This document shows, one piece after another, positions 42,365 through 64,000 of a stretch of 64,000 nucleotides of DNA (the stretch's first letter is position 1; each line of letters starts with the position of its first letter). The stretch is from contig NW_019217795.1 of the NCBI RefSeq assembly GCF_002571385.2, forward strand, positions 524,767 to 588,766. The letters are read 5' to 3'. This DNA comes from Stylophora pistillata (lineage: Eukaryota). The notes beneath the pieces were generated by a model, which worked only from the letters and a program-made list of their open reading frames with translations, searched no databases and had not been told where the DNA came from. The translations under genes and the position numbers were made by a program.

Positions 42365-45300
42365 TTATTCACTAGTTCCATAAAGCGTTAACACCCATTT
42401 TGATACCGTGCCTGCATATCCTCCAGCTGAATCAGAGCCTTCATCCTCTTGCTGCAATAAACTATCTAGATCACCCTCATCTTCAGCCACTGGGAACACC
42501 TGATCACGCATGTAATCTTTTCCAAACCGGCCATGATGTATTTCATCATGATAGCTGTCATAATCATCCACGATTTCATCGCGTCGCGCTTTCAACAGGT
42601 CATGTTGTATTAGAACCTTCTCTCTCTCTTCAATATCTGGTTTTGATGGTGCACTTGTAGACTTCTTGTTATGATGGAATCTTAGAATCCATGTACCTTT
42701 TGGGGACTCATCCCAGAAGTGCACAGTCATGAAAGCCCAGTCATTCAGTCCAAATGTGTCCTTATCATTGCGGCGAACAGAAAGTAACTGACTTGTCATT
42801 TTTCCTGGGGAGGTGAGATCTATGCTGATATCACCACGGAATGCCTTGGATAACCTGAAGCTGACAGTGACCTGTACGTGTTCCAGTTTCTCAATGTCAC
42901 ATGCATCTGTGTTGAGGCTCAGCTCCAGGCTACCTCGTAATGGAATATGTCCATCCTTTATAGGGCCAATTACTGAACAATTCTGCTGTTCCCCTACTGG
43001 AATCCAATTCAATGCTGCACTCACCATTTTGGCAGCATTAAGACGACCAAATCCAAACTTGTGATTCACCAACAAACCGGCAGCATTCTTGATCCATCCT
43101 TCATCTTTTGGACTGGTCTTCAATGCAGTTTTCACAACAATGTGTTGAAGATCGCGCCACGTCAGATTTCGGTTTGCTTCCAGAACCAAAGCAAAGATAC
43201 CAGAAGCCAGTGGAGCAGCTGATGAAGTGCCACGGAACCTTGTTGTGCATTTATGCTTAAGATCAGTGGTGACTAGGTCAGCTTCACTAGAGCCACCGCG
43301 GTGAGTGTCTCCCGTGTAAGTTACTGCCATAGTAGATGAACACTGCTCATCATAGTAAGTGGACAGACCATATCGACTGACGGCTCCAATAGATATTGTG
43401 TAGATACTTGATGTGTAGCCATCTGCATTGCAGTCATCGTCAGCAAGACCTCCATTACCAGTAGCCCAAACAAATACACTTCCTTTCCCTGGGGAGAAAT
43501 AATAAACAATTTTGGGTATACCAATTGTAGTGACTGGGTATTTGAGATTTCTTCAATGTAACAACGAGGATGTGTACAGCACTTGCCTTTAAATGGCAGC
43601 CAACTACATTAACCCTTTACACCCTAACATCAGTATGCATATTCTCCATACTGTTCTCTATACATTTCCTAAGGTGCTGACAAGGAGAATTTGTTAAACG
43701 ACCAAGAGCATTTTCAGCTAGAGATCTAATCCTTTATTCTCGTAACCTTACTGTTAGATTTAGAGGAGATATCATAGAGAGAAATAAGATGCTCAGTCAC
43801 TCTTAGTAGTCAGTGAGTTATAACCTGAAGTCACTGTCACACTTAGGACTTTCCCCCTCTAGTCATCAATTTGGGATTGATGCGTTACCCTTGATTGAAA
43901 GTGACTCTCACTGATGAAACAGCAAAGAAAGTGAAGTACAAATTTGCTTAAAATAAATCAAAGGCACAAGACAAGTAACCTGGTGCCTAAAATCAGATCA
44001 CGCTCACGACCACCCCTCCCCCCTCCTCCTGCTCCGCGCAGATTCTTTGTTGCAAGGCTACTGTATTTAATAATATAAAATAGCTTCCTGCAAATTGTGT
44101 TTTCTAAACTTCACATTTTCTCAAGAGTGAACCAAACCCACAAACTCCTTAGTTTTTCTTCAGGCATTAGACAGATAGACATAATTGTTTGGAAAGGGAA
44201 AGTTAAATTTGTGTTTAGAACCAAAATGTTGTAACCCTATTATCAAATCCCAATTTGTAAAGGATTCATTTACACTCAGCTGTCAAAAGTTAGAAATGTG
44301 TTGGCTGAATAAACAATGAGTGCTTTATTAAATACTGTGTTGTTTTACCAGTCACCAAACCGTAGAAGCTTGTAAAACTGAAGCATATCTGCCAGTAAAA
44401 GACCTCTGTTTTCAAGGTCCTGACGCTGTTGTGTAAGCTAAATAACTTTTAAAAACATCCGTGTTAAGAAAATTTTTGTTGTGGTTTCAAGTGGTCAGCT
44501 AACCTTTACGAAAAAAATATTTTACGGAAAAGAAGGTTAAAGAATTTCCTTCTACGAATATTTCGCCTCGATACTGGTTAGTTAATACAAACACTGTACA
44601 TTTTCCTCCCAATAATAATGATTCTTAATGATAACCTCTTAATTTTCCCTCGCATTTCCAGGCTAGATCCTTATCGGAATAAAGTCATTCTAAATTTCAT
44701 TTGTAATGACAAATGAAGACTTCCTTCCTTCTTTCCTTTTGTGGACAATAGAGAAGCTGTGAACAGTTTAAATGCGAGTGGGTGAGCCTACGAAATAACA
44801 TACGTCAAGAAAACTTTTAAACACCCACGCATACTTAATGAATCTCCGGAATATAACATATGGAATCAGAGCAGAAAGTAAAATATAAATTCTTAATTTT
44901 AAGTTAAAAAGAGAGCTGTAGGAAATTTCTGTCTCAGAATACAGCGAAAACTATTCAACCGAAAATTAACAATTCGATATATAAAATCTAGTCTCTGTGA
45001 TAATCAAAACGAAACCTGGCTCTGAGGTTTAAATATCAATAATTAATGACGATCAATGAACTCAACATTCTGAATACTAAGTCTGGCGCAAGCTATCTAA
45101 AGTTGATTTATTTTACAAGGAAAACATGATCTTGATTTTCTCTTTGAAGTAAAGTTTTCTCCCGATCGACGTTGACAAGAACTAATAAATCATCTTTGTG
45201 CCTGAAAATTAAGTTTACATGGCCGTTGTCAAATTAGTTTAGCTTACCTCCTCGACCGTACTTAGCGCCATCTTCAAACGATTGCCTTCCCAAAGGTCCT

Positions 45301-46232
45301 GGCCTTCCAAAGGTCTTTCCGTCGTCTTTCGGTCCCCAACAATTACTGTAAATATCGATGTAGTCACGTCGAAAGCCTAAAGCGGTTGCTTCTAATAAAT
45401 CTGTTGCTGTACCGTCGAGCATTCGAATGCCGCCAAGATTGACGTTAAAAGCTACTCCGACTCCGCATTCGTTGTTATCTTCTTGAGCACCTACTTCACC
45501 AGCACATTTCGTACCGTGCGCGTTGTACGGATCGTTGTCATTCGGAAATGGATCGTCGTCGTCGTCATTTAGGTCTCTACTTGCGTATGGATCATAGTTT
45601 CTCTTCAAATCAGGATGTGTGTGATCTAAACCATCGTCGAGAATACTGACAACAACACCTTTGCCTGTTATGCCGCGGCGCCAAACATCGAGTACCCCTA
45701 TATCAGCTCCGACTAAATGTTCATCAGTTTGACCCCAATTCGCCAAATACCACTGCTTTTCCCATCCAGGATCGTTAAATATTCTCTTGTATCGCAGTTC
45801 TCGGTATTTTCTCTCCAATTCTCTTTCTTTTAGGTAACTCTCTGGCAAGAAGTCGCGCTTGTTTCGTTCTAGAACGCGTTGTTGTTCGGCCCATACGATC
45901 CTTGGATGATCGTTGAGTTGACGAGTTCTCTCTGTCGCTCGTCGCCTCAAACGAGCGCTTGTTCCTTCGTGCAAGAACCTGAAAACACGGGGCAAGCTGT
46001 CAATTCTACCATTGTGTTTCAAATCAAAATTTCTCGCTATTTCGTCAGCAAGGTCGGAGTCGTCCTCGTCCAGTTCGACCGCCCAGATATTTGTGTACAG
46101 AGGTCTATCATCTTCTCGGAGGTCACCGAGATGCTCATAATCTTGAAATTCTTCGATTTCATACTGAAAGACGGGTAGAATCAAAACCACTACAAGAAGT
46201 AGCGACTTGAAAAGACGTTTTCTAAGAATCAT
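42365..46232 (-). CDS. PC1/3-like proprotein convertase A (kexin/furin family S8B), ~702 aa, no TM segment
   Basis: Exons 46232-45248 and 43488-42365. Signal peptide, prodomain, RNKR site, catalytic D (ILDDG), H (HGTKCAGE), oxyanion N (GNGG), S (GTSSAAP), P domain with RGD, ending WVLTLYGT. Confidence 0.95.
43609..43821. mobile_element. Abundant ~200 bp piggyBac-like MITE family (other copies near 12378-13188 interrupted, 25835, 26762, 28640, 36125, 36525, 37683, 39293, 39588)
   Basis: TTAA-CCCTTT...AAGGG-TTAA type ends and a shared core ATTCTCC...ACATTTC...GGAGAATTTG. Confidence 0.7.
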
Positions 46233-49200: not shown

Positions 49201-50408
49201 TTCATTCGATTAATTTGTACATATTTCAGCAATGCTGCTGAAGGACAACGTGAACAGATTATCTTTAAATTAGAATTCCCTTTTCCCCGTAGAAGCTGGT
49301 CCCCCCTCACTGCCCAGCCCTAAAACCCTTTGTGAAAAGCTCGTTTCTCTCGATTGTGAAAAATATTTTGTTCCAAATTGAAACTCTGAACAGCTTGATC
49401 GCCTGGTGCACTGATATATCGCAATGTCTACGGTAGAGAAGGCAAAAGTTTTCTTTGCATTCACAAATAATAATAAAACTTGCCAAAAATTCAAATGGAA
49501 AAGAGAAAACCTCGTCAACCGGGCATTGCCAGAGGAAATGCGGGGGAACATGATTACTTAGCAATACCTGAATGCCCTTTTTTTAAAGACAAGCCTCACC
49601 GTAGTAATTGTAAATCTCAAACATCCCAATAATTTGACAATATTTAAATATGACGAAGGGAAAATATCATCTCACGTAAAACCCTGGAAATTTGTTATCG
49701 ATGAGGCTCTTACTTCACTCCATGAACTAGTGACAATCATTATAATTCGTTGATTTCAATACAATCATACTGAATCCCCGAAGAAGATGAGAAGATAGAT
49801 TCTTAAAGATTCTTACACCAAATGGGACTGTTCCCCGTATTTTTCTCCCGTTTATAAGTCCTTTATCTCCTTAAAATGATTAACTTACAACTTCTCCATA
49901 TATTAATGATAGCTAATTTAGTAAAATGGCGACGAGAACAGATGAACTTATCAGATAGTAAGCGTTATCTTGATATACTCGCAAATCCCCTTTGCTAATC
50001 TGCAGGAAATGTATAAGCAACCCCGGTCCCAGGTCTGTCTTTAGGAACGCGAAGAAAAAGGAGTCTGGACACAAGTTTAAAGAGTAGTCTACAGTAAATA
50101 ATTGTTAATCTGTCTTGGGAGACGAAGGCTCAATTCGCCTCGCCTGCAGAACAGGCATCAATTCTTTTCTTTTTTTTTTTTTTCCTTTTTTTTTTTTTTT
50201 TTCCTGTTTTTTTTTTTCCTGTTTTTTTTTTTTTTTCTCGAGGAGTCCTCTTACGCGCGACACGCCTTTCGCGTTTCCCACGCGCTTCCTTGTGCTACTT
50301 CAACTCCACTGAAAAACAATAAAAAAAACTCACTCCTTCTACAGGCTCTTAATACACCATGACGATCTGCTCTTAGACGCTTTTTACTATGACCCTCTAT
50401 TATAAGAT

Positions 50409-53400
50409 TCAGGCGGTACCATACATGACAAGAGACCAATTCCTAACGCAGCCAGCTATAGGCCCTTGAAGTGACTTTGAATGTGAACACATTGACGACT
50501 CATCAGAAGCCACATTAATGGGTTGGTTTGGTCCTTTCACTGACTTCATATAATCTTCCTTAAACCGTCCATGAATAAGCTCGCGCTGGAAACTGGGCTG
50601 GTCTTCGCTCCTCTGAGGAAACTTTTCGTGACGCTTTTCCTTCGATCGCTTTGACAAGCTCATGTAATCTTCCTTGAAGCGACCATGGGAAAGATCATTT
50701 GCGATGCTCGGTTCGTCTCTGGATTCTCCTTCGTCAAACAATATACCGTGGCTTCTAGGAGAGTAGTCGTTTTCAGACTGAAAATTAAAAAAAAATAGAT
50801 ATTTATAACATTATTTTTTAGAAAGAGTAAAATCAACAACGAAACAAAGTTTCCGTGACTCGTAGTTTCATGCTTTCGCAATCATCTGACGGAATCATCA
50901 CCGCCTGATGATTGCGAAAGCATGAAACTACGAGTCACGGAAACTTTTTTTTCGTTGTTGATTTTACTATTTCTATTTACGCTCTACTTTTTGCATTGAG
51001 CACTATACAGCCAGCTAAAGCATCTCCTCCAGATAACATTATTTTTTATTTATATTTTATGTGCAACTGAATGTCATTAGAATTGGTTTAGCTTCCATTC
51101 GCTTAGCAAAATTGTACCATCCTTCCAAACAATCACATACAGATCTAAAAACCAATTTTGTGGCTCAGTCAAAGGCTTTTTTCCCTCCAAAAATATACCA
51201 TCGCATTACCTTCTCGTCCCTGATCTTCACAATCCACTCGCCTTGAGGGTCCTCGTCCCAAAATTCAACAGTCATGAAAGGCCAGTATGCTAACCGTGTT
51301 CCGTCGTCTCGGGGCCTCTTGGCTAGCAGTCGCGAAGTGGTGCCGCTGGGCGAGATGAGGTCGATCACCAGGTCCCCCCGGCGACGGTGGTCTATTGATA
51401 CATTAAACTGGACGTGCTCTAGCTTTTGAATGTCTTCCTTGTCATTGACGAGCTATTTGTAATCAGTGATAATGAGATTAAGAATGGTAATAAAAACGAC
51501 TCGGAATTGATCAAATCTATAAATTTATTAATTTACTGAGTGATTAGACAACACTTTTACCTTCAGTTCCACCTCTCCCTTAGATCGTAACGTTGCTGTA
51601 TCAGGTGTCAAAAGTCCACGAAGTGTATACTTCTGCTGAGTATCAACATGTTCCCATTCCTTCGCTGCATTTATTAAATCTTCCGCATTTAATACACCAA
51701 ATCCATAAGAACGACTGTATTTATGCCCGGCTCCGTTCTGCAAGACAACAAAGGACAGGAAGAGAAAAGAGTCTGAGGTATAACTACTAAGAATACCAAA
51801 TAACAAGAACGGACTCACTCATCGGAGGGAAACGGAAAACTATCATGTTTCAATCTCGTTCGAGTCTTACTTACTGAGACGTTGGCTTAGGACGCAACAG
51901 GGATGTATTTAAGAGGGGGGAGGGGTCATTGCATGTTTGCTGTCTGGTCCATGTTTGACAAAAAAGTGACAAGTAATACAAGCAAAATGTCACGACCCTT
52001 AATGACAGTGAGATATTTATTACGGGTCCCCTCACGGGAAAATCCTGTCACAGTCTTTCTGAGTTGGTGTTGGTTAAGAAACGAATCAAACGGGGGAAAA
52101 AGGGCCCACCCTTCGTGTCTCAAGATACCGGATGTACCACGAATACTACCCACAAACAACGGCTGTGGCTCTTTTGTCGGTAGGTTAAAACAGCCGTAAA
52201 GACATTTGTAAAAATCCACGGAGCCGTGAGAGAACTTGGAAGAAAAACAACTGGTGAAAGAGCAAATACTGCGTGAATTTCTTGGAGAAAAATTTGGGAT
52301 GGTCAATTGAAACCCTTTGTTCCAAGGCCAAAGATGATTTACCGTGCTCCACGAAGGGCTGTCAGGCTCATTTTTGCGCGCGGTTTTAACAACCAAGTGC
52401 TGCATATCTCGCCAAGTAAGGTCAGGATTTGCCTCCAAAACCAGCGCAAAGATTCCAGCTGCCAAGGGAGCCGCACAGGATGTTCCAGAAAACGATGTCA
52501 CACACTTGTGAAACAGAGAAGTTGTTACAAGATGGCTGTAGGACTCTCGCTTACTGCACTGCGAGCCAACATCCCCGGTGAAGACCACGCCCATTGTAGA
52601 AGGGCAGCTCTCGTCGTAAAACGTTTTGCATCCATTGGCGCTCACAGAGGCGATAGACAGAGTATAGATACTTGACGTATAACCGTCGCAGCTACAATCA
52701 TCCTGGCTGGCTCCACCATTGCCAGTGGCCCAGATATACAAAACTCCCTTTCCTTGAAAAAAAAAAATATATAATTTTTTTGAAAGTTTTTTATTTGCCA
52801 AGAGATTATAAACTGTTTTCAATCTCTTGTTTCTGCATATTAAGAGATAAAGTGGCTAAGAGATCAGTGCACCGGTCCCCGGATGTAAAGGTCCTGGGGG
52901 GCCGCTTCTCGAAAGTCCCGGTAACTTAACGGGCCCGTAAAGCTGTTCTGTATTCATTCAAGATTGTGGTTTCGAAAGGTTTTCAACATTATAAAGTGAA
53001 ATCCTCAGCTAAAGAAACATATTAAATTAGACTGGTTAGGGTGCCAGTGACTACTTCTCCATCCTTTAAATTTTGCTTATGAGGGCTTCAGACCCATTAA
53101 GTTACCGGCACTTTCGACACACGAGCCCCAGGTAAGAGATCTGGTTTGGCTCATTTTCTTTTTCTCTCGGACGAGACACTTTATTCGCACATTGCCTCTG
53201 TCCAACGCATTCAGCCGACCTGATCACCTATATCATCCGATTGCAACTTGACATAACAGTTCCTGAGGTAACGCGTATCCAGAAGAACTTATCGCCTGAA
53301 CAGTGGAGAAGACTCACAATTTGTAGTGCAGTCGAAACATCACGATCCTTCTCGGAAGGGAGACAAACTATAACACTTCATAGAAAGTTATTGGCCAAGA

Positions 53401-56400
53401 TGACTAGCAACCAAAATTATTTTGCTTTATAAACAATAATCTCCATTTGGAGCGAAATCATGCACGGATATTTGTCCGAGGACATTATCTGTTCCGAGAT
53501 GAGAACGAGTTTCCGAGGGGAAGCTCAAGGAAAACTGTGAGCTATGAAACTGCGGCGTACTGCTTTTATAAAATATAAACCAAATGCAACTAACGATAGG
53601 GTTTTTGACCAATCAGGGTTCTCGTAGTATCTTAGTTATTTTATAAAAAAACTTATGTTAAGGATAATTTCACACGTTACTTTTATAATAATTTTCATGC
53701 TTAGAACAAATTAAGAATAAATATTAGCGAGAAAAAAACACAACGTTTCGATGACTCCATGTCATCATTCTTAAGTGAGAATAGACTAAAAATGAATAGT
53801 TAATTTATACCGTACGAAGGTGACAAACGCAAAAAGTTTAAAATTTTTTAAAAATCTAAATAAATAATTGCGCGTATTGAGTTCATAAATGTAAACTATG
53901 AAATAAATAGTTTCGCGCGTATGGAATTCGATTGTTTGTTCAAAGAGGGCTTCGTCTTCTTTATGAAAAGCATTTCATGAACTAAACAGTCCAGTTTCCC
54001 GGTGCACTTTTTAAGTACGTTGAAATGCTTGGTCAGGTCGCCGATGGTTTGTAGGCCGTGGTCGTTCTTTAAATGTTTGCCGAATTACGGTGCTCATCAA
54101 TACGTTGATGTAAATGCCGGCTGGTGTACCCGACGTACTCTGCATCGCACAGATCACATTTATAATTATATACAACGCATTGTTGGCTAACTATAGGAGG
54201 TTTAGGCTCACGCATTCTGAGATCTTCACAGATTTTGCAACTCTTGAACACGGGTTGAAGGGTGTGATCGATTTTGTTGCTTAGATCTGATAATTGCCTT
54301 CTTAGAACGAATTAGGCTTGATTCCCGCCGCTCTCTCGGGTCCGGTCTTTTTCGTTCCTCCCCGAGAAGAGGGGAGGAGCGCGGGCTCCGGTCCCCGAAC
54401 AGCGGCTTGTAATCGAGCCTAAGGACAAATGCATACAAATGTAACTGCTTGCCTTAAAGGTATATGGTCAAGGAGGTAGTATTACAAAAAATGTTTTTCT
54501 TTTTTTGATCTCATCCTTTAAATGCACTCAAACGTAAAGCCTATCACACAAACTAGTTCGAAAGCTCAAGCAAACTGTCCCGTACTTAACGACATTATCA
54601 CAATAGTGAACGCCTACGGGGTTTGAAGTCCCCGCGTTTTTTGAAGGGAAGACCAAAAAATGGATGAATTATTTTTACTGAAAATAAAAGCATTTCTACC
54701 TTAAAATCGACTCTTGTTGATCGTTAGAAGCAGAGAAATAAATTTTAGCATTATTTACTGACGACATTCATTTTACATTTCAGGACAAATGCATTTAAGA
54801 CTAGGATAAAATTACTGGCTAAAATTAAATCCGTAAATCTACTGGCTAAAATAAATTCGAGTAAAGAAAAAATTGCAAGAGAGCATTTTTTCGGGTTCCG
54901 TGAATATTTTCCATTCCACATCAGCCTGGGTAATTTTCTCTTATATTCTGCTACCTTGTACAGCAATTTGTGAGTCGGATAAAATTGCGACTAACGAAAT
55001 TTACATTTTTTTGGAAAAAGGTATCAGTTTTAGCGTTGTTCTGGGCTTGAAACATCTTCAGGAAGAATGCATAGTCATTAGGTGTAAAAAGAACTTTTTA
55101 AATTCATATTTTCGTCTCGAATTTTTCACGCAGCAGAAAACTAAATTTTCCTTTCGTTCCAAGAAAAATTTCCTCCGAACTCATTTCAAGAAGGTTTGAA
55201 AATAATTAAATATGCTTTTCGTTGTAAGAGATGATCGTCAAACCCCCTAAAGCAACAACAATTCAGAGCCTTAAAAAGTTTCGTGGTTACGTAATTTCAC
55301 ATCGCCGGTTAGGTATGAAATTGTATTTTCCCTGTGCTAAAACTTTTTCACACAGGAAAAAGCAAATATTTCTTGACCGTCATTGATTTTGTTGTCTCGT
55401 GACAAAAACAGTCTTTGTCAGTCAGTGAATTAAGTATCTGAAAGGACTTACATACATGAAACTCATTTTTAAATTAAATATCGCGATAAAACTCCAAAAT
55501 ATGATCATAAACAAAACAGCTCTGGTCCTTTCGTAGAAAAACATAAAGCGTGCTCGTTTAAGTTGTTAGTATAGCATAAAACGTGTCAAAAGCTTAGAGA
55601 AAAATACAGAGTGGATCACAAACAGGAAAATTAAGCAACCGCGTTCGTGTGTCTTAGCTTTTCAAATTAAAACTTCAATTACACCACCTGTCATCTGTTG
55701 GTTTGAACTTACAAAAAATTCGTCTGTCGTTTTAGAAGCATTTTGTATGAAAAACTACCCATTAATCGTCTAACAATCTTTGCTAAATTTAAATAAGGTT
55801 TCTCCCTTACTTCATGAACTTTTATTTAGCACTTTCCCTACAATTCGTTTGTTATTTGTTGCCAAGTTATTACTGTCGAAATTTTGAACTGATAAAATAC
55901 AGCCTTTCACTATTTTTTTTTCTTTTTTTCATTTTACGTGTAGAAATCGAAAAATTAAAAACAGTTTATACGGAAATTTAGATTGGCCAGTTAACTACAT
56001 TGTTTCTAGAAGTCACCATTGTCGTGACAACTCAAGGTCACCGTTTTGAACAATACTAACTTACCTATACACATGTTAGTGTTTGCCATCGAAGTGCCTG
56101 AAATAATCACTCACCCGGTCCATCACTTAAATTCAACTTGCGAGCAAACCCGCGTATCTAATTAAACGCCATCTGTTTCATGGCTTTGAGAAAACACATC
56201 AAAGAATTAAAACACTCGTAGAAAAGGTAAAGGAATAGTTTCATAATTATTAATCTTGACATAAACTAACAAATTGAAAGAAAAAAAATAGGAAGTGTAT
56301 ACTAACCATCTCTGCCTTCTCGAACACATTTCTCCATGGCGCCACTACCGAGTCTCTCGGGTTTGCCGAATGTTTTCCCGTCATCTTTAGGTCCCCAAGA

Positions 56401-57222
56401 TGCGCTGAAAATGTCGATATAATCGCAGTTGTATCCCAGGGCTTCTGCCTCAATTTGGTCCGTAATAGTTCCGTCGAGCATCCGTATACCGCCAATTTTT
56501 GCGTTGTACGCAACTCCTACACCACAAATATTATTATCGGCCTCGGCGGCGACTTCTCCAGCGCATTTCGTTCCGTGATCGTTGGAAAGGTTGGTATCAT
56601 CTGGCGTTGGATCATGATCAACTCCAACACTAGTTTTATTGTTTACGTCTAAGCTTGCAGCCTCGTCGTAATTTTTACTCAAGTCCGGGTGAGTGTGATC
56701 CAACCCGTCGTCAACAATAGTCACCACAATTCCTTTACCCGTGTATCCCATTTTCCAAGCTTGCAAGACACCAAGGTTTCCTCTGGTATCAGCAAAGTCT
56801 AAAGTACCCATATACCATTGATTTTTCCACAGCGGGTCGTTAAATAATCTGCGATTTCTCTGCGCACGTTCGACTAGCATTAGCGCTTCGTCCCAAGTGT
56901 TAAAACCGCGTTTCTGTCTGATAAGTACTGTTTGTTGTTCAGCCCACTTCACGCGCGGGTGATCTAGAAGTTGTGTATGACTGCTTCGTCTCTGACGTCT
57001 CTCCGATTTTTCGTGAACAAACGCAAAATATCCAGGTAAGTTTGCTATTGGTCCGTTGTTCTTAAATCCAAGATTTTCTGCTATGTTGTGCGCTAATTCT
57101 TCATCGTGCGAGTCAAGTTCAACTGCCCAAGTATTAGTGTATATTTCGCCATCTCCATGATCACTCTCGCAATATACAACGCTCAAACTCACTAGAAACA
57201 CAAACAGTACCACATTCACCAT
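50409..57222 (-). CDS. PC1/3-like proprotein convertase B (tandem paralogue), ~712 aa, no TM segment
   Basis: Exons 57222-56307, 52752-52343, 51737-51537, 51452-51210, 50777-50409. Signal peptide, RQKR, intact D/H/N/S residues (IVDDG, HGTKCAGE, GNGG, GTSCAAP), RRGDL, ending WSLVMYGT. Confidence 0.95.
50851..50894 (-). ncRNA. Minimal hammerhead ribozyme with mutated core (U4A), sense to convertase B
   Basis: TTCCGT-CAGATGA-TTGCGAAAGCAT-GAAAC-TACGA-GTC-ACGGAA, with a perfect 6-bp helix I. Confidence 0.7.
50901..50942 (+). ncRNA. Minimal type I hammerhead ribozyme with intact core, antisense to convertase B
   Basis: CCGC-CTGATGA-TTGCGAAAGCAT-GAAAC-TACGA-GTC-ACGG. Helix II TGC-GAAA-GCA, helix III ACT/AGT, GUC cleavage triplet. 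Helix I has one C:A mismatch. Confidence 0.75.
52897..53128. mobile_element. PIF/Harbinger-like MITE
   Basis: GGGGCCGCTTCTCGAAAGTCCCGGTAACTT...AAGTTACCGGCACTTTCGACACACGAGCCCC, flanked by CTG/CAG. Confidence 0.6.
53700..54305 (-). mobile_element. 3' fragment of a Penelope-like retroelement (GIY-YIG endonuclease) with a hammerhead-like motif at 53739-53777
   Basis: VVYNYKCDLCDAEYVGYTSRHLHQRIDEH...EMLFIKKTKPSLNKQ (frameshifted), stop at 53896. Confidence 0.85.
54312..54421. mobile_element. Short TAG-terminated MITE (Academ-like ends)
   Basis: TAGGCTTGATTCCCGCCGCT...AGCGGCTTGTAATCGAGCCTA. Confidence 0.55.
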
Positions 57223-61785: not shown

Positions 61786-64000
61786 CTAGAAGACGAAACG
61801 GTTGAATGGGGTTGTAAATCCTGGTCCGCCTCCACAGCTCCCTGGGGGACCCTTGCTGGGATCATCATCGTCGTCGTCGGGTGGCTGGTAGAAGTTTGAC
61901 CAGGCTTTTCGCTTGGCAGTGTTCATTACTTGACGCTCTCGCTCCTGTAAAAAAAAGACAACATCCTTATGATGAGTTTGTCCATCGCTAACTCGACAAT
62001 TTGTTCAGTTGCACTATTTGTGTGCATTAAAACTTGGTGTATGGAAGACACGATGGCTTCTTTAGCCACGGAGTTGGAGACACAGTCAGCTGCAAGAGCG
62101 TACCTGACCTCGTGAAAATCTAAATCGGAGTCGTAAACACAGCAATAAGCTTGAAGGAGGAAAAGTAAAAGAACCAACCAATCACGATGTAAGTTGTCAG
62201 GCCAACCGATGGCTTTTGACTCCACCAATTTAGTCTCCAAAGAGTCACAAGCAGCATCGGTACTTTGCCTCTAAATAAGCTGGTTTGATTTGCACCGCAT
62301 CGTATCGCTTTATGCTTCTGATAACGACTTCGACGCTGACGTTACTGAAACCAGCTTTAATGCTGTGCGCGCTGTACTCCGGATCGAAAGGCGCTATTCA
62401 CGCACGAGGGCAGGAGCACACGCGCGCGCACGAAAGTGAATCGTCCCTCGCGTGTCTCGTGATTGCGTCCGACTCCAACGTTGTTACAAACCAGCCTCAA
62501 TAGTGAGCGCACTATATTTTGGGATCGAGAGGCATGATTCACGCGCGAGGGCAGGAGCAGCTGCACGCGCGTGTAAGTAGCGTTTGGCACGTGCTTGCGC
62601 CCGCTTGCTTTTAAATCGTTGGAAACTGCGCCTGATCTGCACACAAAGAGGATTTGAAGTCAAACAGGTCAAACTGACTTACCTGCAAGTATAAGAGGTT
62701 ATCACGATCGACAATGTCCGCCAGCTCCTGTCTGATCTCACCGCTAACCAAATTATCCTGCGCAGAATCACCACTGTTTTCCACTGGAATGATTGTAGCA
62801 CGAAAAGAGCTGACTCGCTTATAGACCAACACATAGGGGGTATCCTTAGGAAAACGCCGGGATACATCAGCAAACGAATTGAACGCCGAGTAAGACACAC
62901 GACTGTCATTAAACAGATACCACGTGTCTTGATCATCGCTTCTAGAACTAGAGCTCTTGTCGCCTTCCCTCCTCATCAAATGCGCGCTAGATCGCGCGTA
63001 GCAGTAATAATGTCCACTCTCCGATGAAGTCCCGGAATGAACGATAACTGAACACAGCGCGTAAACAATATCTGCTGTGAATGTTTCCTCGTTTGAGGAC
63101 AAAGAAGTGTCACTGCTTGAGCTATCAACAACCACACTGTCATGTTCTTGCTTTGTTCTTTTAGACTTGAAACAAGAGTAGCTGACAATATCGTCGTTCT
63201 TGTTGTCATTGACATCTGGGACGCTGTTTCTCGCTTCTCTTTCTATCTTATCATCAACTCCTTTGAGATGAATTCGCGGTAGTTTTAAAACCATAGGATA
63301 AGACACACTTTGTAGTATCTTCGACCTTTGCTGGGTCTTCACATTATAAGCGAACCTCTTTAGGGTCAACACGAGGAATTCTGAGGCATTGGAAATGCTA
63401 ACGGTACGTTCAGCATCCTGTAAACTATGGCAGTGCTCACAATGGTATTGATTAGATCCTTCAAGAATTTCAGGTTCAAAAAAGTACTCTAACATCTCTG
63501 TCAGTGAAATGTGAGGAGCATCAGCTCGAACGCCAGCCTCGCGACATTTCGACGAAACACTCGAACCGGCAGAAAAAGGCATTGAGCTCTCCACTGAGGT
63601 GGAGCTGTGTGATGAACTCGGAGCTACAGCATCGCTATCTTCGACTGTCTTTTGTGCTAGGCCAGCCGCAGACACATTGTGAGTAATATCACCACCTTTC
63701 AGACTTCTGTCGGAGCTCACAGTTGAAGTCACAGGCTTTTCGTCATGTTCAACCGGTTGCTTATCATCTGACGGCAGTTCACCGAGCTGGTCAGAGACCA
63801 TTCTACCCTCCAATTCACCAGTCTGTGGAAAAGCCAGCGGTAGGTCTGTGAACACTTCTTCTCTGCAAGAAGTGTTATTACATCGCCTGCAGCACAGACA
63901 TACCATCAGCTTGCCAGTAAAGGTCTCCTCTACTAGCGACCTCCTTGGCGACCCTTCATCGTTGCTGTTGTTTTGTGACTTTTCCTCCTCGCTGAGTCTG
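61786..64000 (-). CDS. USP38: Ubiquitin-specific protease USP38/USP35, 3' part (gene continues beyond the window)
   Basis: Exons >64000-62683 and 61944-61786. YHCEHC, LTLKRF, His box VIVHSGTSSESGHYY, WYLFNDSRVS, FPKDTPYVLVY, and C-terminus DDDD...PPGSCGGG...NRFVF. Confidence 0.88.

What the first reader, a model, noticed from the sequence alone, without database searches (positions are those of the whole stretch)
50547..50687. HGRFxxDYM: a 9-residue motif repeated under apparent purifying selection in convertase P-domain inserts
Convertase B has HGRFKEDYM twice: cat ggt cgc ttc aag gaa gat tac atg (50687-50661) and cat gga cgg ttt aag gaa gat tat atg (50573-50547). These differ by four synonymous and no replacement changes, while the flanks show little similarity and KR sites lie between the copies. 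Convertase A has HGRFGKDYM in the equivalent insert. I do not recognise this motif. It behaves like a functional linear motif or encoded peptide (sorting signal, autoinhibitory pseudosubstrate, sulfotyrosine site or released peptide) inside a neuropeptide-processing enzyme.
Basis: seen in the sequence. Interest (0 to 1): 0.78.

Follow-up and report, generated by a model that had tools for sequence, protein, structure and literature searches.

The report
Conserved motif in coral convertase loop
Two neighbouring coral proprotein-convertase genes carry a nine-residue motif (HGRFxxDYM) in a long floppy loop inserted into their P domain; across corals it is kept more strictly than part of the catalytic domain, so it is almost certainly functional, but its partner and role are unknown.

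Summary
Convertase B has HGRFKEDYM twice (50687-50661 and 50573-50547, minus strand), with 4 synonymous and 0 replacement differences. Convertase A has HGRFGKDYM at 42535-42509. The window is Stylophora pistillata, and A is the annotated XP_022800545.1, "PC3-like endoprotease variant B".

The motif lies in an 85-110 residue charged insert between the last two beta strands of the P domain. These enzymes have no C-terminal tail. Spliced RNA contigs from four runs confirm B's last intron exactly as predicted.

The motif is invariant in more than 100 coral-type sequences of both paralogues, down to about 40% identity, with freely varying codons. Pooled dN/dS is 0.013 for the extended motif, 0.08 for the catalytic part and about 0.16 for the rest of the insert. 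It occurs nowhere else in the 398 Mb genome. AlphaFold2 on the full-length protein leaves it disordered (pLDDT about 33-35), with no docking onto the enzyme.

Best reading: a lineage-restricted short linear docking motif, extended form [DE][DE][IL]xHGRFxxDYM[KR], possibly tyrosine-sulfated, that regulates or sorts the enzyme. The RFamide-peptide and pseudosubstrate readings are disfavoured. This is a new feature of a known enzyme family, and its function is untested.

The parts
50661..50687 (-). Convertase B, motif copy 1 (HGRFKEDYM)
   Evidence: Conserved in B-type orthologues.
50547..50573 (-). Convertase B, motif copy 2 (HGRFKEDYM)
   Evidence: Invariant H-G-R-F-K-x-D-Y-M in all 13 sequences of alignment A3.
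50412..50777 (-). Convertase B last coding exon (122 codons; stop at 50411-50409). It encodes the whole loop insert plus the final P-domain strand (W-S-L-V-M-Y-G-T-A).
   Evidence: Acceptor AG at 50779-50778. Spliced contigs join 51210 to 50777 in 4 runs.
50778..51209 (-). Last intron of B (432 nt, GT..AG). It contains a long palindromic repeat.
   Evidence: a 432-nt skip whose ends, CT..AC on the + strand, read GT..AG on the minus strand.
51210..51452 (-). B exon 4: P-domain core (RRGD motif up to the strand before the insert)
   Evidence: Pfam P_proprotein, E 4e-14, profile positions 20-70 of 86. RNA contigs.
51561..51737 (-). B exon 3
   Evidence: RNA contig joints 51452|51561 and 51737|52343.
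52343..52753 (-). B exon 2: catalytic domain with oxyanion-hole Asn (W-A-T-G-N-G-G) and catalytic Ser (G-T-S-C-A-A-P)
   Evidence: Pfam Peptidase_S8.
56307..57222 (-). B exon 1: signal peptide, S8 pro-domain, R-Q-K-R site, catalytic Asp and His
   Evidence: donor G|GT at 56307|56306.
42509..42535 (-). Convertase A motif (HGRFGKDYM), residues 647-655 of the 702-aa protein
42365..43488 (-). Convertase A exon 2: second half of the catalytic domain, P domain, 84-residue insert and last strand in one uninterrupted reading frame, ending with the stop codon
   Evidence: 100% identical to residues 330-702 of XP_022800545.1.
45248..46232 (-). Convertase A exon 1: signal peptide, pro-domain, first half of the catalytic domain

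Best explanation
HGRFxxDYM is the core of a roughly 15-residue short linear motif, [DE]-[DE]-[IL]-x-H-G-R-F-x-x-D-Y-M-[KR]. It is displayed on a long, charged, intrinsically disordered loop that these coral PC1/3-like ('PC3-like') proprotein convertases carry between the last two beta strands of the P domain. The proteins stop 2-3 residues after the last P-domain strand. They therefore lack the C-terminal tail that other convertases use for sorting, partial autoinhibition and partner binding, and the loop is their only appendage. The most likely mechanism is that the motif is a docking site for a lumenal partner acting in trans, such as a sorting receptor, chaperone, inhibitor or modifying enzyme, which controls where or when the convertase is active. 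The invariant Asp-Tyr is a plausible tyrosine-sulfation site and the invariant His a plausible source of pH dependence. Independent duplications of the motif (38-residue period in Stylophora B, 33 in other corals, 25 in P0123) would raise the number of docking sites. Shown here: the anatomy, the splicing, protein-level purifying selection, restriction to these two genes, predicted disorder, and the presence of TPST in the genome. Inferred: that the motif binds a partner, what that partner is, sulfation, and the consequence for the enzyme.
For: Position: Pfam matches the P domain only up to profile position 72 of 86 before the insert. Furin aligns to A on either side of a roughly 75-residue gap. 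Full-length AlphaFold2 (mean pLDDT 85.5, pTM 0.84) folds the pro, catalytic and P domains and the last strand (686-700) confidently, but leaves 632-682 below pLDDT 50, with the motif (647-655) at about 33-35. The exon-2-only model gave the same result. Conservation: D-E, H-G-R, D-Y-M and D are invariant columns across 18 sequences down to 40% identity. Both B copies are kept in coral orthologues. 106 fetched proteins carry the motif, with variation essentially limited to the two x positions. Codons vary freely, for example Arg as CGG, CGC, CGA, AGA or AGG. Across 6 genomes the extended motif has pN 0.039 and dN/dS about 0.013. The catalytic part has pN 0.098 and dN/dS 0.084, the P domain pN 0.229, and the rest of the insert pN 0.29-0.36. 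Both tandem paralogues keep the motif, and the gene order UCH, then B-type, then A-type is conserved in a distant genome. Specificity: 3 genomic matches, all here, against 0 in the control. Expression: spliced contigs that include the motif exon in 4 runs, and 702-708 aa transcript-derived proteins in Logan assemblies. Sulfation prerequisite: a TPST orthologue, E 3e-76 to human TPST1/2.
Against: No partner is known or predicted. A low pLDDT does not exclude conditional docking that depends on pH, calcium or sulfation. Lys or Arg at -2 and +2 of the motif Tyr are not ideal for TPST, and the upstream D-D-Y and D-S-Y tyrosines of A look like better sulfation sites. The predicted helix at the start of the insert is not amphipathic (muH 0.26 or less), so there is no resemblance to the PC1/3 or PC2 sorting helix. 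dS is saturated and the pairwise comparisons are not independent, so the dN/dS ratios are only rough. The organisms behind most orthologues are unnamed, so the depth of conservation in time is not fixed.
Confidence: 0.5

Rival explanations
1. Intramolecular regulatory latch. Under some condition (pH, calcium, or after sulfation or loop cleavage) the motif folds back onto the enzyme's own catalytic, P or pro domain and tunes activation or activity, as the PC1/3 tail or the furin pro-domain pH sensor do.
For: Invariant His, and in A-type a H-x-x-x-H-H cluster. The loop is tethered at both ends close to the catalytic domain. A conserved K-A-R-R|D-E dibasic site lies upstream in all A-type sequences, and K-R-S lies between the B copies in 10 of 13, which would allow cleavage-dependent release of the loop.
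Against: AlphaFold2 on the full-length protein, pro-domain included, gives no confident contact for the motif (pLDDT about 33-35). The upstream dibasic site is not shared by all motif-bearing sequences: it is absent upstream of B copy 1 and in the L038 B-type.
Confidence: 0.2
2. Folding or structural aid. The motif is needed in cis for the insert-bearing P domain to close its barrel, for example by transiently guiding the distant last strand back into place. It would have no role in the mature enzyme.
For: Established work on P-domain truncations shows the last strand is indispensable for convertase folding, and here it is separated from the barrel by 85-110 residues. The motif is as conserved as core P-domain residues.
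Against: Related cnidarian convertases have even longer inserts at the same site (170-991 residues) without the motif, so a long loop does not require it. The motif is predicted to be disordered. Variable copy number (1 or 2) fits an interaction motif better than a folding element.
Confidence: 0.12
3. Encoded peptide. The loop is a cryptic prohormone, and HGRF(G)(K) is released and amidated as an RFamide-like peptide, or another fragment is released.
For: In Stylophora A the sequence reads G-R-F-G-K-D, which superficially resembles the Q-G-R-F-G-R/K units of cnidarian RFamide precursors. Dibasic sites occur in the inserts.
Against: Cnidarian precursors use GKR, GKK or GR(R) after the peptide and usually Gln before it (PMC6402141). 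Here the two positions after Phe are GK, GE, GG, GQ, GA, KE, KD, KN, KG or SE. Most orthologues therefore lack either the amide-donor Gly or the basic residue. Selection extends beyond R-F to the invariant D-Y-M-[KR]. The N-terminal residue is His, not Gln. Excising the peptide would cut a loop inside a folded domain of an enzyme.
Confidence: 0.04
4. Active-site pseudosubstrate. H-G-R|F occupies the S3-S1' subsites and inhibits the enzyme.
For: The invariant Arg could serve as P1.
Against: From established kexin/furin specificity, convertases need a basic residue at P2 and/or P4. Here P2 is Gly and P3/P4 are His, Ser, Leu, Ile or Thr. The acidic flanks would be repelled by the acidic substrate cleft. 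AlphaFold2 predicts no docking.
Confidence: 0.04
5. No protein-level function. The conservation reflects a nucleotide-level element (splicing enhancer, RNA structure), recent gene conversion between copies, or chance.
For: The two B copies lie in one exon and could in principle exchange sequence.
Against: Third codon positions and even Arg codon families differ between copies and species while the residues stay the same. The motif is shared by paralogues A and B, whose flanks are unalignable. In A and in L003 no intron is nearby. The genome-wide control gave 0 matches.
Confidence: 0.02

Closest known systems
Kexin/furin-family proprotein convertases, PC1/3-like group (Hydra 'PC3-like endoprotease'; annotated XP_022800545.1 in Stylophora pistillata)
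   Same: Signal peptide, S8 pro-domain with R-x-K-R site, subtilase domain with Asp/His/Ser and oxyanion Asn, and a P domain with RGD and the terminal L-Y-G-T strand.
   Different: An 85-110 residue disordered insert replaces the roughly 10-residue loop that precedes the last P-domain strand in furin. There is no C-terminal tail, Cys-rich region or transmembrane segment. The insert carries the HGRFxxDYM motif, which furin, kexin and the roughly 180 other convertases fetched here lack.
C-terminal tails of PC1/3 and PC2, and the acidic Tyr-rich segment after the P domain of PC5/6 (from established literature, recalled, not re-read here)
   Same: Non-catalytic, largely unstructured, charged appendages next to the P domain that carry dibasic sites and Asp/Glu-Tyr sites and regulate sorting or activity.
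   Different: Here the appendage is a loop inside the P domain, tethered at both ends, not a free tail. Its predicted helix is not amphipathic. No sequence similarity was found.
Large P-domain loop inserts of other cnidarian convertases (Hydractinia symbiolongicarpus XP_057307062.1, 991 residues; the P0011 cluster, 215-270; P0010 and P0015, 170-190)
   Same: Same insertion point, before the last strand. Charged, low-complexity content. A similar acidic D-[ILMV]-E-E start.
   Different: They lack HGRFxxDYM (regex; motif HMM, best E above 1).
Cnidarian RFamide neuropeptide precursors (Antho-RFamide type)
   Same: The G-R-F tripeptide. In a minority of sequences a following G-K.
   Different: No conserved Gly-basic signal, no N-terminal Gln, one or two copies only, and embedded in an enzyme domain.
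7B2 and proSAAS, dedicated convertase-binding proteins of bilaterians
   Same: Conceptually, a specific short peptide determinant that regulates a neuroendocrine convertase in the secretory pathway.
   Different: Those act in trans and are separate genes. No sequence similarity to them was tested or seen here. This is an analogy only.

Membership tests
Kexin-like proprotein convertase (PCSK1-7 type) | Subtilase catalytic domain with Asp, His and Ser plus oxyanion-hole Asn | tested here: met
   A: D-D-G-L-D, H-G-T-K-C-A-G, G-T-S-S-A-A-P, W-A-T-G-N-G-G. B: the same four elements. Pfam PF00082. Furin E 9e-74.
Kexin-like proprotein convertase (PCSK1-7 type) | N-terminal S8 pro-domain ending in a basic cleavage site | tested here: met
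   PF16470, E 2e-18 for A and 4e-24 for B. R-N-K-R in A and R-Q-K-R in B.
Kexin-like proprotein convertase (PCSK1-7 type) | Complete P domain including the last strand | tested here: met
   PF01483 up to profile position 72. The last strand aligns to furin's T-L-V-L-Y-G-T and is modelled at pLDDT 78-98 in the barrel.
PC2 (the label 'Neuroendocrine convertase 2' given to the Desmophyllum fragment P0003) | Asp in place of the oxyanion-hole Asn (established PC2 hallmark) | tested here: not met
   Both A and B have Asn in W-A-T-G-N-G-G.
Short linear motif (ELM sense) | Three to about 12 specified residues forming an island of conservation within poorly conserved flanks | tested here: met
   Invariant columns. 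pN 0.039 against 0.29-0.36 in the flanking insert.
Short linear motif (ELM sense) | Located in an intrinsically disordered, accessible region | tested here: met
   pLDDT about 33-35 at residues 647-655 in a model with mean pLDDT 85.5. This is a prediction only.
Short linear motif (ELM sense) | Binds a defined partner domain | not testable with these tools
   No candidate partner was identified. Needs pull-down or proximity labelling.
Cnidarian RFamide neuropeptide precursor | Peptide copies followed by GKR, GKK or GR(R) and usually preceded by Gln (PMC6402141) | tested here: not met
   The positions after Phe vary (GK, GE, GG, GQ, GA, KE, KD, KN, KG), and the preceding residue is His or Tyr.
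TPST tyrosine-sulfation site | Acidic residue at -1 of Tyr, an acidic neighbourhood, lumenal exposure, and the enzyme present in the organism | tested here: inconclusive
   Asp at -1 is invariant. Only 2 acidic residues lie within +/-5, alongside nearby Lys or Arg. The motif is exposed and disordered. A TPST orthologue is present. Actual sulfation was not tested.
PC1/3- or PC2-type amphipathic sorting helix | A helix with a high hydrophobic moment | tested here: not met
   The insert helix 614-637 has muH of 0.26 or less in all 18-residue windows.

The most novel reading that the evidence does not exclude
The motif is the receptor-binding or chaperone-binding determinant of a cnidarian- or anthozoan-specific control system for prohormone convertases. 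It would be a functional counterpart of the bilaterian 7B2/proSAAS or tail-based systems, built into a P-domain loop. In that case it would decide delivery of the enzyme to neurosecretory granules or nematocysts (PC3-like enzymes occur in nematocyst and polar-capsule proteomes: PMC4848628, PMC5566210), or its pH-gated activation there.
Probability: 0.15. Interest if true: 0.7.

Novelty: new variant of a known kind. Interest (0 to 1): 0.5.

Why it matters
Proprotein convertases mature neuropeptides, toxins and growth factors. How the early-branching cnidarian enzymes are sorted and switched on is unknown, and they lack both canonical PC2/7B2 and the tails used in vertebrates. A 9-15 residue element that is the most strongly constrained stretch of the C-terminal half of two paralogous coral convertases gives a precise handle that can be mutated. 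Mutating it should show whether these enzymes are regulated through a P-domain loop. The finding also marks the last P-domain loop as a hotspot for very large insertions across Cnidaria.

Tried and rejected
(1) RFamide-precursor or released-peptide reading: rejected because the amidation and cleavage signal is not conserved.

(2) Docking into the catalytic cleft or onto the enzyme: two AlphaFold2 runs (exon 2 alone; full-length with an 88-sequence alignment) leave the motif at pLDDT 25-35. There is no support, although conditional docking is not excluded.

(3) Amphipathic sorting helix analogous to PC1/3 or PC2: the hydrophobic moment is low.

(4) The motif as a general signal in other proteins of this genome: none found. 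About 36 other P-domain matches in the genome were not examined one by one, but none carries the strict motif.

(5) Motif in hydrozoan or other convertase inserts: none by regex or HMM.

(6) ESM Atlas look-alikes of the insert: only P-domain fragments, at scores of 0.81 or less, uninformative.

(7) Metagenome pattern scan: 12 of the 51 hits that could be classified are coral convertase loci. The other 39 are chance matches in unrelated frames, among them a human-gut-metagenome contig (L047) that was not pursued.

(8) Literature: no paper describing the insert or the motif was found. The Hydra PC3-like paper (PMC49566) is not held.

(9) Complex prediction was not used. No credible partner pair existed, and a split-chain test would pass trivially through strand complementation.

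(10) B was never joined into a spliced protein. A full-length fold was done only for A, through the public protein P0195.
Full report
OBSERVATION. On the minus strand, the last coding exon of convertase B (50777-50412) encodes HGRFKEDYM at 50687-50661 and again at 50573-50547. The two copies differ at four third-codon positions (GGT/GGA, CGC/CGG, TTC/TTT, TAC/TAT) and at no amino acid. They lie 38 codons apart. In the register of that repeat, 22 of 29 flanking codons are replaced against 0 of 9 core codons (Fisher p = 7e-5). The 12 upstream codons still share S-x-D-x-P-S-x-x-x-[DE]-L. The pair is therefore an old internal tandem duplication in which only the core escaped replacement. Convertase A has HGRFGKDYM at 42535-42509. 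A degenerate DNA pattern for HGRFxxDYM hits the whole 398 Mb genome three times, all at these sites. The reversed control hits zero times.

WHAT THE GENES ARE. Both genes are complete kexin/furin-type proprotein convertases on the minus strand, downstream of a ubiquitin hydrolase gene. A has two coding exons (46232-45248 and 43488-42365). Exon 2 is 100% identical to residues 330-702 of XP_022800545.1, 'PC3-like endoprotease variant B' of Stylophora pistillata, and exon 1 reads the same N-terminus. The window is therefore from that coral or a near-identical genome. B has five coding exons (57222-56307, about 52753-52343, 51737-51561, 51452-51210, 50777-50412). Both have a signal peptide, an S8 pro-domain with an R-x-K-R site, the Asp/His/Ser triad, an oxyanion-hole Asn (so neither is PC2-like) and a P domain. 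Both end 2-3 residues after the final L-Y-G-T strand, so there is no C-terminal tail of any kind.

WHERE THE MOTIF SITS. Pfam's P-domain profile matches only up to position 72 of 86 before the insert. Against furin structures, A aligns continuously up to the strand before the insert and resumes at the last strand. About 75 extra residues take the place of a roughly 10-residue furin loop. In A the insert, P domain and last strand form one open reading frame. The insert is therefore not an annotation artefact. AlphaFold2 on the full-length public protein with an 88-sequence alignment gave mean pLDDT 85.5 and pTM 0.84. The last strand (686-700) is confidently in the barrel. Residues 632-682 are below pLDDT 50, and the motif (647-655) sits at about 33-35. 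A model of exon 2 alone agreed. The insert is charged: A has 23 acidic residues of 84 and net charge -12, and B has net charge -2. It starts with a moderately confident helix (614-637) that is not amphipathic.

SPLICING AND EXPRESSION. Contigs from four public runs join 51210 directly to 50777, skipping 432 nt with GT..AG ends on the gene strand. Two of the runs are poly-A RNA-seq of a closely related coral sample, and two are runs of the same organism whose library type is not on record. The same contigs also join the two upstream introns. For A, 702-708 residue proteins from 3-4 kb Logan contigs carry both exons and the insert.

CONSERVATION. A search of 1.8 billion representative proteins and two word-based searches recovered last-exon ORFs and a few full-length proteins of the A type at 59-95% identity. 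They also recovered more distant insert-bearing sequences at 40-46% identity (P0008, P0027, P0123). Across these 18 sequences the invariant columns inside the insert are D-E, H-G-R, D-Y-M and the following D, with H, F and R nearly invariant. The rest of the insert is poorly alignable. B-type last exons from twelve further coral sources, at 57-93% identity, keep both copies wherever the exon is complete. Of the 289 proteins fetched, 106 carry the motif, 43 of them twice. Variation is confined almost entirely to the two x positions. Named sources are Stylophora pistillata and Desmophyllum pertusum, and most others are unnamed coral or metagenome contigs. In a distant genome (L003; its A type is 59% identical) the order ubiquitin hydrolase, B-type, A-type is retained and both genes carry the motif. 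The A/B duplication and the motif therefore predate that split. Copy number varies. There is one copy in L038's B-type, P0008 and P0027. There are two at a 38-residue period in Stylophora B, two at 33 in other corals, and two at 25 in P0123. This points to repeated, independent duplication of the motif. Codons differ freely between species and copies. With Nei-Gojobori counts pooled over six A-type genomes, the extended motif has pN 0.039 and dN/dS about 0.013. The catalytic part of the same exon has pN 0.098 and dN/dS 0.084. The P domain has pN 0.229 and dN/dS 0.12, and the rest of the insert has pN 0.29-0.36 and dN/dS about 0.16. dS is saturated and the pairs are not independent, so only the ranking should be trusted. 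That ranking is clear: the motif is the most constrained stretch of the exon. Other cnidarian convertases have still larger inserts at the same loop: 991 residues in Hydractinia, and 170-270 in three other clusters. They have no trace of the motif. The loop is a cnidarian insertion hotspot, and the motif is a lineage-restricted addition to it.

WHAT IT IS NOT. It is not an RFamide precursor. Cnidarian precursors mark each copy with GKR, GKK or GR(R) and usually an N-terminal Gln (PMC6402141). Here the residues after Phe are GK, GE, GG, GQ, GA, KE, KD, KN, KG or SE. The residue before Gly is His or Tyr, and selection runs on through D-Y-M-[KR]. It is unlikely to be a pseudosubstrate. P2 is Gly, P4 is not basic and the flanks are acidic, and AlphaFold2 places nothing in the cleft. 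It is not an RNA or DNA element and not gene conversion, because the variation is synonymous only and Arg codon families are swapped. It is not a general motif of secretory proteins in this genome.

MOST LIKELY MECHANISM. The features fit a short linear interaction motif. It is short and sits in a predicted disordered, exposed, lumenal loop. It is an island of extreme conservation between fast-evolving flanks. It changes copy number by local duplication and is shared by two paralogues that share nothing else in the loop. Because these enzymes have no tail, the loop is the only place where sorting, partner binding or autoregulation could be encoded. I therefore rank a trans-acting partner-docking site that controls localisation or activity first, at about 0.5. 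A conditional intramolecular latch comes second at about 0.2, and a folding aid third at about 0.12. Tyrosine sulfation of the invariant D-Y is possible, since the genome has a clear TPST orthologue. It is not well predicted by context, and the D-D-Y and D-S-Y tyrosines just upstream in A are better candidates. The conserved K-A-R-R|D-E site of A-type loops and the K-R-S site between the B copies could allow cleavage of the loop, but they are not common to all motif carriers. Everything beyond anatomy, selection, expression and predicted disorder is inference.

COMPARISON AND NOVELTY. The genes are ordinary members of a well-known family, and A is already annotated. I found no description of the P-domain loop insert or of this motif in the searchable literature, and the original Hydra paper could not be read. 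PC3-like enzymes are reported in jellyfish venom and myxozoan polar-capsule proteomes. This gives a possible, untested link to nematocyst targeting. I class the finding as a new variant of a known kind: a convertase whose regulatory appendage is a loop inside the P domain carrying a previously unnoted, strongly constrained motif.

LIMITS. The N stretches of the window were not touched. The taxonomic span rests mostly on unnamed contigs. Disorder and the absence of docking are predictions. No experiment bears on function.

Noticed in passing
window 50819-50975 (intron of B): A near-perfect palindrome of about 75 bp per arm. Rfam at E <= 0.01 gives only sub-threshold generic hairpin and miRNA-family matches on both strands, and no hammerhead family. 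RNA contigs of much higher depth (112-125) with many mismatches and strand-switch joints map here, so it looks like a multi-copy transcribed repeat (MITE-like).
   Followed up: partly
window 52850-53049 and 54050-54449 (intron 1 of B): Very high contig depth (up to 768) with loose ends in all four runs. These look like copies of abundant repeats or transposable elements rather than B exons.
   Followed up: no
window 62611-63906 (minus) and L003 3720-5003: A ubiquitin C-terminal hydrolase (UCH/USP) gene lies upstream of the convertase pair. The order UCH, B-type, A-type is conserved in a distant genome, where the B-type has no intron in front of the insert.
   Followed up: partly
P0151 (Hydractinia symbiolongicarpus XP_057307062.1), P0011 cluster, P0010, P0015: Other cnidarian convertases carry inserts of 170 to 991 residues at exactly the same P-domain loop. 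Within the P0011 cluster the insert differs in its middle part between members. This loop is an insertion hotspot.
   Followed up: partly
window 50412-50500 (B) and alignment A3: B-type inserts keep two invariant cysteines (W-C-x-P-S ... A-G-C-V) just before the last strand. This suggests a loop-closing disulfide that the A type lacks.
   Followed up: no
window 50575: The poly-A RNA-seq contigs (X10, X11) read G for A, changing the Ile just before copy 2 to Thr. Other corals also have Thr, Ser or Asn there. The motif itself is unchanged.
   Followed up: no
G000 contigs C88, C263, C1207, C321: The genome has about 36 P_proprotein-domain matches, many in tandem clusters on a few contigs. That is far more than the handful of kexin-like convertases expected and may be an expanded family of P-domain-containing genes.
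   Followed up: no
P0003 and P0286 (Desmophyllum pertusum KAJ7371840/KAJ7371841): The A-type orthologue of this coral is annotated as two fragment proteins with different names ('Neuroendocrine convertase 2' and 'PC3-like endoprotease variant B'). The PC2 name is not supported, because the oxyanion residue is Asn.
   Followed up: partly
window 50105-50281: A purine-rich (GAAAAA-like) low-complexity tract just downstream of B's stop codon, inside the transcribed 3' region. It creates spurious Lys- or Phe-rich ORFs on both strands.
   Followed up: no
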